Assembly: GCA_004431415.1 (NCBI GenBank)
Contig: QPMI01000203.1
Coordinates: 94,641-158,640, forward strand
Reading direction: 5' to 3'
Origin: Cyanophora paradoxa CCMP329
Taxonomy: Eukaryota; Plantae; Glaucophyta
Length of the DNA stretch: 64,000 bases
The translations under genes were made by a program, and so were the position numbers. Positions 43,270 through 46,868 of this stretch are shown piece after piece. The notes under the pieces are model-generated. The model saw only the letters and a program-made list of their open reading frames with translations, was not told where the DNA came from and did no database searches. How positions within the stretch are numbered: position 1 is the stretch's first letter; every line of letters starts with the position of its first letter.

Positions 43270-43336
43270 CCCGGCCGGCGGCCCGCACAGACGGGGCCCG
43301 CCGCCATCTTGTACCTCCTCTCAGTCTCTTACGATA

Positions 43337-43553
43337 CTGTAAGGCTATTATTTTAGACGGGTATTAATATAGGCGCGGATAGACGAGGTAACCCATTCGT
43401 CTAACTTAATCCCCGCCTAACTGTGCACGACGCGGGTATATGATAGAACCGCCTGTATGGAGCAGGCAGCAGCTCGTCTAAATTTGTCCACGTCTGTTGT
43501 AGTGGGTGGGCAAACGTCTAAGTTTAAACCCGTCTATAATAATAGCCTTACAG
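43337..43553. mobile_element. 217-bp MITE, Tc1/mariner-pogo-like, with TA target-site duplication
   Basis: Left TA|CTGTAAGGCTATTATTTTAGACGGGT; right ACCCGTCTATAATAATAGCCTTACAG|TA. The 26-bp TIRs have one mismatch. AT-rich, non-coding, several internal TAGACG/CGTCTA motifs. Confidence 0.85.
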
Positions 43554-43831
43554 TATGACTCCAAAAATCTGAAACGTGCGCGGCCGGCGGCGAGCACACG
43601 TCGGCGACGGTCGCGGAGGCCCACGGCAAAACAGGGGGCGCGACGAGCTCGGGATGTTCCGGTCGATGCTTCATCTCGAGGGAGTACAGGGCATCGCTTT
43701 GTCAGCGCTAGCTGCGTCCGCTCTGCTCTACCGGCACCGATTGAAGGCGCTAGACGTCGGCAGCCCTGTGCAGCGCGCGCCGCGACAGGAAGGGAGCACG
43801 TCCGGCTGCCAGTGCGCCGGCCAGCCGGAGC

Positions 43832-45043
43832 TCACGGGCTCTTGCCGCCCTCGCCCTTCTTGGGACTCTCCTTGCGCTCCCGGTCCCCGCTACGGTCGCG
43901 CTCGCGGCTCCGCTCGCGCTCGCGACTCCGCTCGCGCTCGCGGCTCCGGTCCTTCCGATCGCGGTCGCGGCTGCGGCTGCGCTCCCTGCGCTCCTCCTTG
44001 CGGTCGGGGCTGCGGCTCCGGCTGCGGCGCGAGCGGCGGGGCGAGCGCGACCGGGAGCGCGACGTCCGCCGCCGCTTCTCCGCGCGATCCCCTGCCCGCC
44101 CCGCCTCAGCGACGCCGCCCCTGGGGACGGCCACGCCCAGCACGCGAGGCGGGCGCGGTACTCACGCGAGCGCGACCGCGAGCGCGAGCTGCGGCGGAAG
44201 GGTCAGCGGGCTGGAAAGGAGGGCGCCGGGTGGAGCGCACCGACGGCGGGGGCTTCGGGAGCGCTCACGGCTGCCGCCGCCGCCGCGCGGAGGGGACTGG
44301 TAGCGCCAGCCGGCAAGCGGAGGCTTGCGGGCCCACTGCAGGGTGATTGATCGGCCGTCGATGCGCTTGCCTTGAAGACCTGTCGGAAGCCTGCGATGAG
44401 CCGCCCGCGGCACTGACTGTGAACGCGCAGGCACGTACCGTCGAACTGAGGTGTTGCGCCGGGGCGAAATACGATGTAAATAAGGGAGGCGGCGAAGACA
44501 TAGGAGGGAGCCTTAGCTAAGAGGCCGCACCGCATCCTGCCATCAAGAGCGTCAGTGGCTCCCTTGATCGCAAATCCAAAGCAAGAAACTCGCCTCAGCG
44601 TCCCGGTCGTCGTCATACTCGATGAATGCGAAGCCCTTCGACTGACCCCCTGTACCACAGCAGTAAGCGTCGCGTCGATATGCGGCAGCTTCGCCCAATG
44701 ACCCTCCTCTAAACTCTGAGACACGCGAGCGAGAATGGGCGAACCCTGCCGGCCGCGTCAAGCCGGTCAGCGCGGCAGGCGAGGATACAAAGCTTATGCG
44801 GCGAATGCACGCACAGGAGTCGGCACGTCGCAGCGCCGCAGCTTGCCGTACTGCGCGGAGTGTCAGTGCTGCTCACCAGACCGATCCGCCGCGGGATAGA
44901 CCTTCGAGAAGTACTGCGCGAACACGAACGAGGCGTCGTCAGGCGAACACGATTGCAACTGGCGAAGGCGAAGGGCGGACCTCGGAAAGCGTCGCTGATG
45001 TTGTATCGAACGACAGCCCTCCCGCAAAGATTGTTTTCCCCAT
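43832..45043 (-). CDS. SR-type splicing factor (one RRM plus RS domain) encoded by microexons
   Basis: Spliced: MGKTIFAGGLSFDTTSATLSE|YFSK|YGKLRRCDVPTP|G|GQSKGFAFIEYDDDRDAE|DA|FDG|LQGKRIDGRSITLQWARKPP...RSRSRSPRRSRRSRSRSP. RNP2 is IFAGGL and RNP1 is KGFAFIEY. Confidence 0.9.
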
Positions 45044-45184
45044 GCTTCTCTCTCGCGGGAGATGGCCCGGAAGGACCTCCTCGCCGACTAAGCGACCTTC
45101 CCCAGGGGTACCCTCGACGTTGGCTCACAAGCGTACGCTGGACGCGGTTGGACGCTGGACGCGGTTGGACGCTGGACGACTTCG
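45044..45184. promoter_or_regulatory. 141-bp divergent interval with palindromic GGGTACCC and a 17-bp tandem repeat
   Basis: GGGTACCC at 45106-45113. cgctggacgcggttgga repeated ~2.5 times at ~45137-45178. Confidence 0.6.
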
Positions 45185-46868
45185 ATGCGCGGGACGCTCG
45201 CGCTGCTGAGCCTGGCCCTCACAGCCCTGGCGGTATCGGCTGCTGCTGCTAGAATCGATCAAGACGAGATGATGGATCAAGAGGAGATGATGGAGAAGCT
45301 CTCACGGCTCGAGCGATTCCTGGAGCGCGAGAAGCGTGAGCTGGACGCGCTTCCCAAGGTCAGTTTTTACCGGCGTCATGACGCGCGAGGGCCATTCGGG
45401 TTGCAGCTAGCGTGCTGCGGGGGAGCTGGGGCCGCAGGCTGACGTACGTCGAGCGCTGACACGCGGGCCGCAGGTCGACCCTCGCAGCCTTCCCCGGGGG
45501 CAAGTCGTCGCGGGGATGCTCGAGTCGAGATCTTTGAAGATTAGCTACCTCGGAATACGTGAGCTCTTTCAGTGTTTGGAGCTGTAGTACCTGCGGCGGC
45601 AGCGGCATCACCAAAAATTTGATCGAACTTGCGCCGCGCAGGGGATGTGAAGAGCCTGTTGCTTTTCTGTGCGCTCACGCGATGATCATAACAGCCTTAA
45701 TTCACACTGACACAATCCGCTTTAGCTAGCTAACACCACTTCTCTCTACGACCTGCACTACGCTAATTCGAAGTTCCGCAGTCTTTTTCGAGGACCGCCC
45801 GTGGATGCAGCTGCTGCTGTTTGGAATGATGCTCTGCGGTATTCTATTCTCTATATCGGTGGTACGGCTTGTAATCAGGGTGCGTGGTCAAGGGTTAATT
45901 TCGTCCAACTCTCGTCCAACTTTCGTCACTTCAGATGCGTCACGTGCGGCCGATGGAGGCGGAGCTGAAAGCTGAAGAAGTCTGCTTCACCCGCCTCGCG
46001 ATACTTGCTCAGAAAGCGGAGCTCGGCCGGAGGATGGCGAAGCAGAAGGACGAGCAGAAGAGGCTGGACGACGAGATCGACAAGCAGTCGGACCTCGCGG
46101 AGAAGAGCGCGGACAGGATCGTGCGCCGGGGCCCCCCTCTCGGGCGTCGCGGGCCGACGCGGGGCCGGGGCAGGACGAGATCCGGGCGAGGATGGACCGG
46201 GTGCCGAAGGCCCTCACGTGGCCCATCGGGGCGGGGGCGGCCCTCGTGTGCGCCCTGGGGGCGGCGGCGGCGCGGGAGGCCTTCCGGCGGGCGCTGCGGG
46301 CCAAGGCGCTCGCCGCCGAGGAGCTCTACCTCGCCTACCTCGAGCGCTGCGGGCAGCGGAACGCCTTCGCCGCCGACCCCGACTGGCTCGTCTCCCTCTG
46401 GACCCCCGGCGCCGCCGCCGGGGGCGCCGCCTTCGGCATGCCGCCCCCGCAGGACGGGCACTGCGGGGCCCTCGAGGCAGACCTCTCGGCGGCCAACCCG
46501 GGCCTCGTCTGGGGCGCCTTCGCCGCCGCCATGGCCCCCGCCGAGCTCGCCCGCGCCGCCCGCGAGGCCGCCGGGCTCGCCCGGGCGCCCCCTCCGACCT
46601 CGCCGTCCACGCCCTCCTCGCCACCCTCGTGCGGCCCCGCCCCGGGGGCCCCGCCGGCGCCTCCTAACGCGGCCCGCAGGCGCTGCTCCTCGCCTCCACC
46701 CTCGCACGCCGCTTCCTCAAGCAAGGCCCCGGCGCCGCCAAGGCCGGCGACAAGCCCGCCGGGGGCGAGGCGCCAGCGGCGGAGGCAGGGGCCCCGGCTG
46801 CGGCTGCAGCGGCTGCAGAGGAGCCCGAGCAGCACGCGCACGGTTGCGGCTGCTGCGGCGCCGGCTGA
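45185..46868 (+). CDS. Signal-peptide, multi-pass membrane protein of unknown function with a His/Cys tail
   Basis: MRGTLALLSLALTALAVSAAAA signal; TM segment WMQLLLFGMMLCGILFSISV; coiled coil; TM segment WPIGAGAALVCALGA; C-terminus EQHAHGCGCCGAG. One apparent frameshift in a C-run near 46590. Confidence 0.5.

What the first reader, a model, noticed from the sequence alone, without database searches (positions are those of the whole stretch)
44379..44913. SR splicing factor RRM assembled from 12-, 6-, 7- and apparently 1-nucleotide exons
Seen (minus strand): the RRM only reads through if tiny exons are used, namely TACTTCTCGAAG (44913-44902), GATGCG (44536-44531) and TTCGACG (44445-44439). Each has consensus donors, a branch-like motif and a CAG acceptor, and together they restore YFSKYG and DAEDAFDGLQGKRIDG. 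Between exon 3 (ends 44815, phase 0, donor gtgcgt) and the RNP1 exon (starts 44649, needs one extra base) lies ctgac...ttgac...ggcag|G|gttcgc: an acceptor, a single G at 44745, then a donor also used in purA. This gives two normal-sized introns (69 and 95 nt) and the peptide PTPGGQSKGF. Known: a single-nucleotide exon has been reported in Arabidopsis APC11, and SR genes commonly autoregulate by unproductive splicing. Inference: this gene may act as a splicing-fidelity sensor, since skipping the 1- or 7-nt exon frameshifts the RRM.
Basis: partly seen in the sequence, partly recalled or inferred. Interest (0 to 1): 0.9.

Follow-up and report, generated by a model that had tools for sequence, protein, structure and literature searches.

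The report
One-nucleotide exon in algal SR gene
A splicing-factor gene of a GC-rich alga (probably Cyanophora paradoxa) really is stitched together from exons of 12, 6 and 7 bases, and its mRNA carries one extra G that is best explained by a one-base exon, a rare but already known kind of gene structure.

Summary
Spliced transcript contigs from four independent studies agree exactly. The mRNA holds the 12-nt exon (44913-44902) and the 13 nt of the 6-nt plus 7-nt exons (44536-44531, 44445-44439).

A single G cannot be placed from mRNA alone. One intron would need TG..AG or GT..CA ends. The two-intron model puts the G at 44745, in cag|G|gttcgc, with a CTGAC branch motif 21 nt upstream. Its introns are 69 and 95 nt, within the 51-95 nt range of the gene's other introns. 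That composite signal occurs only once in the window's 128 kb, at this site.

I put the 1-nt exon at about 0.8. Rivals are a non-canonical intron, an error in the G5 run at the acceptor, and a weaker G at 44703.

The product is a 200-aa protein with one RRM and an RS domain. The "splicing-fidelity sensor" idea has no support: only one isoform is seen, and skipping creates no early stop. One-nt exons are already known in Arabidopsis, Fusarium and Coprinopsis. The scan has also noted unverified 1-nt and 2-nt exons elsewhere in this genome.

The parts
44981..45107 (-). Exon 1: 5' UTR (about 45107-45044) and ATG at 45043; encodes 21 aa with the RNP2 part of the RRM; donor gtccgc
   Evidence: Contig pieces reach 45096-45107; translation; matches the start of RRMs in solved structures, E about 0.01-0.03
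44902..44913 (-). Exon 2: 12-nt micro-exon (YFSK), phase 0/0, cag before and gtctat after
   Evidence: 10 extra letters plus a 2-nt overhang at joint 44852|44981 in four runs; the only occurrence of the 12-mer in that interval
44815..44850 (-). Exon 3: 36 nt (YGKLRRCDVPTP), ends in phase 0, donor gtgcgt
44746..44814 (-). Proposed intron 3a: 69 nt, GT-AG, CTGAC with branch A at 44767 (21 nt from the 3' end), TTGAC A at 44758
   Evidence: absent from all transcript contigs
44745..44745 (-). Proposed one-nucleotide exon: a G that is the first base of the Gly codon GGG in ...PTP-G-GQSKGF
   Evidence: mRNA has exactly one extra G; one of only two AG|G|GY sites in the 165 nt, and the only one with cag, GTNNG and a CTRAY motif
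44650..44744 (-). Proposed intron 3b: 95 nt, donor gttcgc, cttac with A at 44664, acceptor acag
   Evidence: absent from all transcript contigs
44594..44649 (-). Exon 5: 56 nt, RNP1 (GQSKGFAFIEYDDDRDAE); followed by a GC-AG intron (gcgagt, 57 nt)
   Evidence: RNP1 match to nucleolin RRMs at E 1.3e-6, and to PABP, PUF60, SRSF2 and SRSF7
44531..44536 (-). Exon 6: 6-nt micro-exon GATGCG (DA)
44439..44445 (-). Exon 7: 7-nt micro-exon TTCGACG (FD + G)
44241..44379 (-). Exon 8: 139 nt, end of the RRM (LQGKRIDGRSITLQWARKPP) and start of the RS domain
44166..44188 (-). Exon 9: 23 nt, RS repeats
   Evidence: piece 44165-44188; GT-AG once the 1-nt ambiguity is resolved
43650..44091 (-). Exon 10: rest of the RS/RE/RD-rich domain, stop codon TGA at 43834-43832, 3' UTR to about 43650
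   Evidence: The loose end of the contigs at 44165 continues with the sequence from 44091; contig length gives the 3' end; ORF of 200 aa

Best explanation
This is a constitutively spliced 10-exon gene for a 200-aa SR-type protein, with one N-terminal RRM and a C-terminal RS domain. The organism is an intron-dense, short-intron alga, probably Cyanophora paradoxa. The RRM is cut by seven introns into exons of 63, 12, 36, 1, 56, 6, 7 and 139 nt. The lone G at 44745 is a true one-nucleotide exon between two ordinary GT-AG introns of 69 and 95 nt.

Inferred mechanism: introns in this genome are recognised as units (intron definition), so exon length matters little. The acceptor of intron 3a and the donor of intron 3b overlap within about 3 nt, so the two introns cannot be engaged at the same time. 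They are probably removed one after the other, as in recursive splicing, but leaving one base behind.

Shown: the mRNA sequence, the micro-exons of 12, 6 and 7 nt, and the splice signals around 44745. Inferred: that the G comes from 44745, and the order of the two splicing steps.
For: One spliced contig per run in four studies gives the same joints. Exactly one G lies between 44815 and 44649, and the intron interior has no depth. A single intron would need TG..AG or GT..CA ends (table 5, ends CT..CA on the + strand, both=1). All eight other introns of the gene are GT-AG or GC-AG with a CAG acceptor.

The site cag|G|gttcgc has G at donor +5, like seven of the eight other donors in the gene. It has a CTGAC branch motif 21 nt upstream, within the 12-25 nt seen in four confirmed introns. 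The composite CTRAY(5-35)CAG|G|GTNNG occurs once in both strands of the 64-kb window, at this site. The chance of finding it in a given 165 nt is about 0.001.

Introns of 69 and 95 nt fit the gene's range of 51-95 nt and the published genome mean of 86 nt (PMC6704402). An intron of 164 nt would be the gene's longest by far. The same gene splices 6-, 7- and 12-nt exons correctly.

One-nt exons are documented elsewhere. Arabidopsis APC11 was proven by mutagenesis (PMC4674806). Fusarium CYP621A has the same AGGGT context (PMC12940212). Coprinopsis has 13 such exons (PMC12230235).
Against: The inserted base is G. That is also the first base of the 44814 donor and the last base of the 44650 acceptor, so the mRNA alone cannot locate its origin. 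No raw reads were available, so no partly spliced intermediates or lariats could be examined. No relatives were found, so conservation of cag-G-gt is untested. A second AG|G|GT site exists at 44703. The acceptor lies in a G5 run, and one missing G in the assembly would remove the need for the exon.
Confidence: 0.8

Rival explanations
1. A single 164-nt intron with non-canonical ends (TG..AG, cut after 44814, or GT..CA, cut before 44650). The internal cag-G-gt would be a coincidence.
For: The aligner places the joint this way with no letters between the pieces. The 3' part (cttac branch motif, acag) is shared with the two-intron model. Earlier scan notes say 5' splice sites in this genome pair weakly with U1 (unverified).
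Against: All other introns of the gene have GT or GC and AG ends. TG-AG and GT-CA are not recognised spliceosomal classes (general knowledge). There is no U12-type donor or branch consensus. The internal composite signal has a chance of about 0.001. At 164 nt the intron would be almost twice the length of the next longest in this gene.
Confidence: 0.08
2. Assembly error, or an unseen near-identical paralogue. The genome would really have six G at 44650-44646, so the intron is a plain GT-AG intron of 165 nt followed by GGGGGTCAG.
For: The acceptor g is the first base of a G5 run, and the mRNA has five G after CCT. The published assembly is PacBio-based, and such assemblies are prone to homopolymer indels (PMC6704402).
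Against: That assembly was polished twice with Quiver and then corrected by majority rule with about 33 Gb of MiSeq reads. A 2012 DNA run of the same organism holds 1.00 of the 96 sampled 31-mers of window:44200-45100 (X13). About 3 of those words should span the run, so it is likely but not certain that the run was checked. The exons match the RNA contigs with 0 differences and 0 gaps.
Confidence: 0.05
3. The one-nucleotide exon is the other candidate, G at 44703 (gag|G|gtcatt), giving introns of 111 and 53 nt.
For: It is the only other AG|G|GY site in the interval.
Against: Its acceptor is gag, in a purine-rich stretch, whereas all nine other acceptors are cag. There is no CTRAY motif within 35 nt upstream. 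The donor gtcatt lacks G at +5.
Confidence: 0.04

Closest known systems
Single-nucleotide exon of Arabidopsis APC11 (Guo and Liu 2015, PMC4674806)
   Same: One extra base in the cDNA is required for the reading frame. It lies alone inside the apparent intron, between AG and GT, with a branch point upstream. It is constitutive.
   Different: In APC11 the base is an A, so there is no ambiguity with the splice-site G, and it was proven by substitution and deletion constructs. Here the base is a G, and only mRNA sequence and signal statistics are available. The APC11 flanking intron is long (333 nt upstream), whereas here both are short.
One-nucleotide exon of Fusarium CYP621A P450 genes (Nelson and Syed 2026, PMC12940212)
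   Same: The context is the same AGGGT, and the G belongs to a glycine codon of a conserved motif region. The organism has short introns, the apparent intron is over-long, and support comes from public RNA reads.
   Different: The Fusarium case is conserved across 20-24 orthologues. Here no orthologous locus could be examined. The G is the middle base of the codon in Fusarium and the first base here.
Ultra-short exons in the long-read annotation of Coprinopsis cinerea (PMC12230235): 13 exons of 1 nt, 57 of 2 nt, 27 of 3 nt
   Same: An intron-dense genome with short introns, in which exons of 3 nt or less recur. The scan's unverified notes suggest the same for this alga.
   Different: It is a fungus, not a glaucophyte alga, and no genome-wide count exists for this genome.
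Recursive (ratchet-point) splicing with zero-length exons, as in Drosophila Ubx and other long introns (general knowledge, not tested here)
   Same: A 3' splice site lies directly against a 5' splice site, and the two steps must be sequential.
   Different: Ratchet points leave no base behind and subdivide very long introns. Here one base stays and both introns are under 100 nt.
SR proteins with one RRM (SRSF2/SC35-like; definition of Manley and Krainer 2010, general knowledge)
   Same: An N-terminal RRM with RNP2 and RNP1, the RDAEDA motif after RNP1, and a C-terminal domain rich in RS dipeptides.
   Different: The subfamily could not be assigned, because the joined protein was not searched. 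The last third of the C-terminal domain is RE/RD-rich rather than RS-rich.

Membership tests
One-nucleotide exon | The mature mRNA carries exactly one base between two exons that is not contiguous with either one under canonical splice sites | tested here: met
   Joint 44649|44814 in the contigs of four studies. Canonical sites 44815|44649 leave one G over.
One-nucleotide exon | That base occurs inside the intervening sequence, directly flanked by AG upstream and GT or GC downstream | tested here: met
   cag|G|gttcgc at 44745. One weaker alternative lies at 44703.
One-nucleotide exon | Both resulting introns have normal length and branch signals for the organism | tested here: met
   Lengths of 69 and 95 nt against 51-95 nt in this gene and a published mean of 86 nt. 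CTGAC lies 21 nt upstream of the first acceptor and cttac 14 nt upstream of the second.
One-nucleotide exon | The genomic sequence is correct at the splice sites, so the extra base is not an assembly artefact | tested here: inconclusive
   DNA run X13 holds all sampled words of the stretch, and the published assembly was Illumina-corrected. The G5 run itself could not be inspected in reads.
One-nucleotide exon | Changing or deleting the base changes the mRNA accordingly, or splicing intermediates or lariats end at it | not testable with these tools
One-nucleotide exon | The AG-N-GT site is conserved in orthologous loci | not testable with these tools
   No relatives were found in the metagenome contigs or the protein collections.
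SR protein | One or two N-terminal RRMs | tested here: met
   Exon 1 matches RRM beta-1/RNP2 segments. Exon 5 matches RNP1 segments, with nucleolin at E 1.3e-6. Pfam found nothing for three exon pieces of 21, 45 and 84 aa that do not hold RNP1.
SR protein | A C-terminal RS domain of at least 50 aa with more than 40% RS content in consecutive RS/SR dipeptides | tested here: met
   The C-terminal 116 aa are 39% R and 21% S, with 36 RS/SR dipeptides. In the best 50-aa window, 31 residues lie inside RS/SR dipeptides.
SR protein | Activity in constitutive or alternative splicing | not testable with these tools
   Needs experiment.
SR-gene autoregulation by unproductive splicing (poison exon or NMD-coupled isoform) | An alternative isoform exists with a premature stop more than 50 nt upstream of the last exon junction | tested here: not met
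   Only one isoform appears in the contigs of four studies, though contigs drop rare forms. The predicted skip of the 1-nt or 7-nt exon gives ORFs of 227 and 225 aa that end after the last junction.

The most novel reading that the evidence does not exclude
The chain of 12-, 1-, 6- and 7-nt exons inside the RRM of a splicing factor could be a built-in gauge of spliceosome performance. When splicing accuracy or SR activity drops, the 1-nt or 7-nt exon is skipped and the frameshifted product lacks RNP1, so the output of this SR protein is coupled to splicing fidelity. More broadly, this genome may use exons of 1-2 nt routinely.
Probability: 0.07. Interest if true: 0.8.

Novelty: new member of a known kind. 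Interest (0 to 1): 0.55.

Why it matters
One-base exons test the limits of exon recognition, because there is no room for exon-definition signals, and the acceptor and the next donor overlap on the RNA. Documented cases are few: Arabidopsis APC11, Fusarium CYP621A and 13 genes in Coprinopsis.

A transcript-supported case in a glaucophyte would extend the phenomenon to a third major lineage of intron-dense, short-intron genomes. Here it sits beside exons of 6, 7 and 12 nt in one 240-nt domain.

It also has a practical side. The published gene models of this genome are admitted to need curation (PMC6704402), and genes like this one cannot be predicted without micro-exon-aware methods.

Tried and rejected
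A gtgcat donor 4 nt downstream would give a single 160-nt intron. It is in frame (201 aa) but is not what the mRNA shows.
- **Alternative acceptor.** An acceptor at tcag|TCGAAG (exon start 44641) is also in frame (197 aa) and canonical, but is not used.
- **G/C skew.** I looked for a C-rich then G-rich pattern that would reset at 44745, following earlier scan notes. The confirmed introns of this gene show no consistent pattern, so this says nothing.
- **RNA structure.** An 8-bp pairing joins the gttcgccc donor to tgggcgaa (arms 44727-44743 and 44690-44706). The folds are no better than shuffles (z 0.97 and 0.34).
- **Duplication origin of the site.** No repeat links intron 3a or 3b to other junctions.
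- **Finding the protein or relatives.** Exon 8 against 1.84 billion representatives gave only low-complexity hits. Antisense and sense ORF queries gave nothing. Exact-product look-ups gave nothing. Metagenome scans by peptide patterns and by a DNA pattern allowing five or six G gave nothing.
- **Pfam and PDB on exon pieces.** Pfam gave no hits on exon pieces, and the PDB search with exon 8 gave none.
- **Joined model.** The joined (spliced) protein was not sent to any search, fold or database tool. It was built only inside local scripts, which counted frame, stops and composition and printed one 60-residue stretch across the junctions.

Full report
**What is there**

Read on the minus strand, window 45107-43650 holds one gene. 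Its first exon starts with ATG at 45043. The exon pieces translate to recognisable parts of an RNA-recognition motif. Exon 1 gives 21 aa with a GKTIFAGGLSFD start. Exon 3 gives YGKLRRCDVPTP. Exon 5 gives GQSKGFAFIEYDDDRDAE. Exon 8 gives LQGKRIDGRSITLQWARKPP followed by RS-rich sequence.

**Transcript evidence**

That is the share expected if only the longer exons are present. Three 2012 runs of one sample, unlabelled but presumably DNA, hold 0.81-1.00.

I laid the contigs of four of the RNA-like runs, from four different studies, on window:44150-45250. Each run has one contig with the same joints, no differences from the genome in the exon pieces, and no depth inside the introns.
- At joint 44852|44981 the contigs hold 10 letters that lie on neither side. 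The aligner had absorbed 2 nt into exon 3, so these are the 12-nt exon at 44913-44902.
- At joint 44380|44593 they hold 11 letters. With 1 nt absorbed on each side, these are GATGCG plus TTCGACG.
- At joint 44649|44814 nothing lies between the pieces. The piece that covers exon 3 runs one base past 44815, so the mRNA reads ...ACTCCT, one G, then GGGGTCAG...

The sequence it named as refutation (donor gtgcat 4 nt downstream) is not there. A further in-frame canonical option is also not used: an acceptor at tcag, with the exon starting at 44641.

**Placement of the small exons**

The 12-mer occurs once in its interval. The 13 nt do not occur contiguously. Among all splits into up to three pieces that require AG before and GT or GC after each piece, only the 6+7 split at 44536 and 44445 exists. 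These three micro-exons are therefore established.

The intron after exon 5 starts with GC (gcgagt). No GT alternative fits the mRNA, so it is a GC-AG intron with G at exon position -1.

**The single G**

A lone G cannot be placed by mRNA alone, because it equals both the first base of the donor at 44814 and the last base of the acceptor at 44650. There are four readings.

(a) *A one-nucleotide exon at 44745.* The site is cag|G|gttcgc. It has the CAG acceptor seen at all other introns of the gene, G at donor +5 as in seven of the eight other donors, and a CTGAC with its A at 44767. That A is 21 nt from the acceptor, within the 12-25 nt found in four confirmed introns. The introns would be 69 and 95 nt. 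The gene's other introns are 51-85 nt, and the published genome mean is 86 nt (PMC6704402). The composite signal is CTRAY, then 5-35 nt, then CAG, G, GTNNG. It occurs once on both strands of the 64-kb window, at this site, so the chance of meeting it in a given 165 nt is about 0.001.

(b) *A single 164-nt intron with TG..AG or GT..CA ends.* No other intron here has such ends, and there is no U12-type consensus.

(c) *A missing G in the assembly.* The acceptor g opens a run of five G, and a sixth would make everything canonical. Three things argue against this. The published assembly was Quiver-polished and then corrected with deep Illumina data. The DNA run X13 holds all sampled words of the stretch. 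The exons agree perfectly with the RNA. I could not inspect reads over the run itself.

(d) *The other AG|G|GT site, at 44703.* It has a gag acceptor, no branch motif and a gtcatt donor.

I weigh these at about 0.80, 0.08, 0.05 and 0.04, with the rest unassigned.

**Mechanism (inferred)**

With introns this short and exons down to 6 nt spliced correctly, the spliceosome here must define introns rather than exons. At 44745 the acceptor of the upstream intron and the donor of the downstream intron overlap within three bases. The two introns can therefore hardly be engaged together. Stepwise removal is the likely route, as in recursive splicing, except that one base remains. Which intron goes first is unknown.

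**The protein**

The model has 10 exons and encodes 200 aa. I built the joined model only inside local scripts, for frame, stop and composition counts and one 60-residue junction print. I did not send it to any search or fold tool, and searched the exons one by one by reference.
- Exon 1 matches the first strand and RNP2 of RRMs in nucleolin, hnRNP A1 and CIRBP (E 0.01-0.3).
- Exon 5 matches RNP1 segments of nucleolin (E 1.3e-6), PABP, PUF60, SRSF2, SRSF7 and U1-70K.
- Pfam does not score such short pieces.
- The C-terminal 116 aa are 39% Arg and 21% Ser, with 36 RS/SR dipeptides.

This meets the usual definition of an SR protein. The subfamily is not assigned.

**The functional idea**

The contigs show one isoform only, but contigs drop rare forms, so this is weak evidence. 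In silico, skipping the 12- or 6-nt exon stays in frame. Skipping the 1- or 7-nt exon shifts the frame. Because the sequence is so GC-rich, the shifted frame stays open for 227 and 225 aa and ends after the last junction. The usual nonsense-mediated decay trigger of SR autoregulation is therefore absent. The idea is not excluded, but nothing supports it.

**Organism and context**

Earlier follow-up notes of this scan name the genome as Cyanophora paradoxa. GC content, intron density and the dates of the runs fit the two published assemblies, but I did not verify the name independently.

The scan holds several other notes of 1-nt and 2-nt exons in this genome, in a kinase, OLA1, a cyclophilin, AKR, Hsp20 and p24. 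One, the kinase, was followed up but without reading the spliced mRNA. They are leads, not support. I found no paper linking Cyanophora and micro-exons.

**Comparison with what is known**

One-nucleotide exons are documented in three places:
- Arabidopsis APC11, proven by mutagenesis (PMC4674806).
- Fusarium CYP621A, with the same AGGGT context, conserved in 20 or more orthologues and seen in public reads (PMC12940212).
- The long-read annotation of Coprinopsis cinerea, with 13 exons of 1 nt (PMC12230235).

The present case is a new member of this kind, in a new lineage and in a splicing-factor gene. Its evidence is at about the level of the Fusarium case, minus the conservation.

**Dead ends**

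Searches for the protein, for genomic copies and for relatives all came back empty. RNA folding and G/C skew gave no signal.

Noticed in passing
window 43334-43556: A small AT-rich element with 42-nt terminal inverted repeats (86% complementary, arms 43334-43375 and 43515-43556) and three copies of a 22-nt internal repeat. It looks like a MITE and lies about 100 nt beyond the 3' end of the SR transcript.
   Followed up: partly
window 45137-45360 (+ strand): A head-to-head neighbour gene. Its transcript contigs start at about 45137-45142, only some 30-45 nt from the SR gene's 5' ends (45096-45107). The ATG is at 45185, and the product starts with a signal-peptide-like stretch followed by an acidic coiled-coil-like stretch. 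The first donor is at about 45359. A 17-nt unit is repeated about 2.5 times in its 5' UTR (45139-45178).
   Followed up: partly
window 44537-44593 (- strand): A GC-AG intron (gcgagt, 57 nt) with G at exon position -1. The mRNA requires it, because no GT alternative fits.
   Followed up: yes
window 44690-44706 and 44727-44743: A 17-nt imperfect inverted repeat inside proposed intron 3b. Its core pairs the donor ttcgccca with tgggcgaa 37 nt downstream. The folding energy is no better than shuffled sequence, so it is probably chance.
   Followed up: yes
window 44811-44814 and 44641-44650 (- strand): Two canonical, in-frame alternatives lie next to the used sites: donor gtgcat 4 nt downstream, and acceptor tcag 8 nt downstream. 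They would give 201- and 197-aa proteins, yet neither appears in the contigs of four studies.
   Followed up: yes
window 44170-44189 and 44273-44293: A separate transcript contig of about 3 kb in two runs matches only these 20-nt RS-coding stretches. It is probably another RS-domain gene elsewhere in the genome (records 2 and 6).
   Followed up: no
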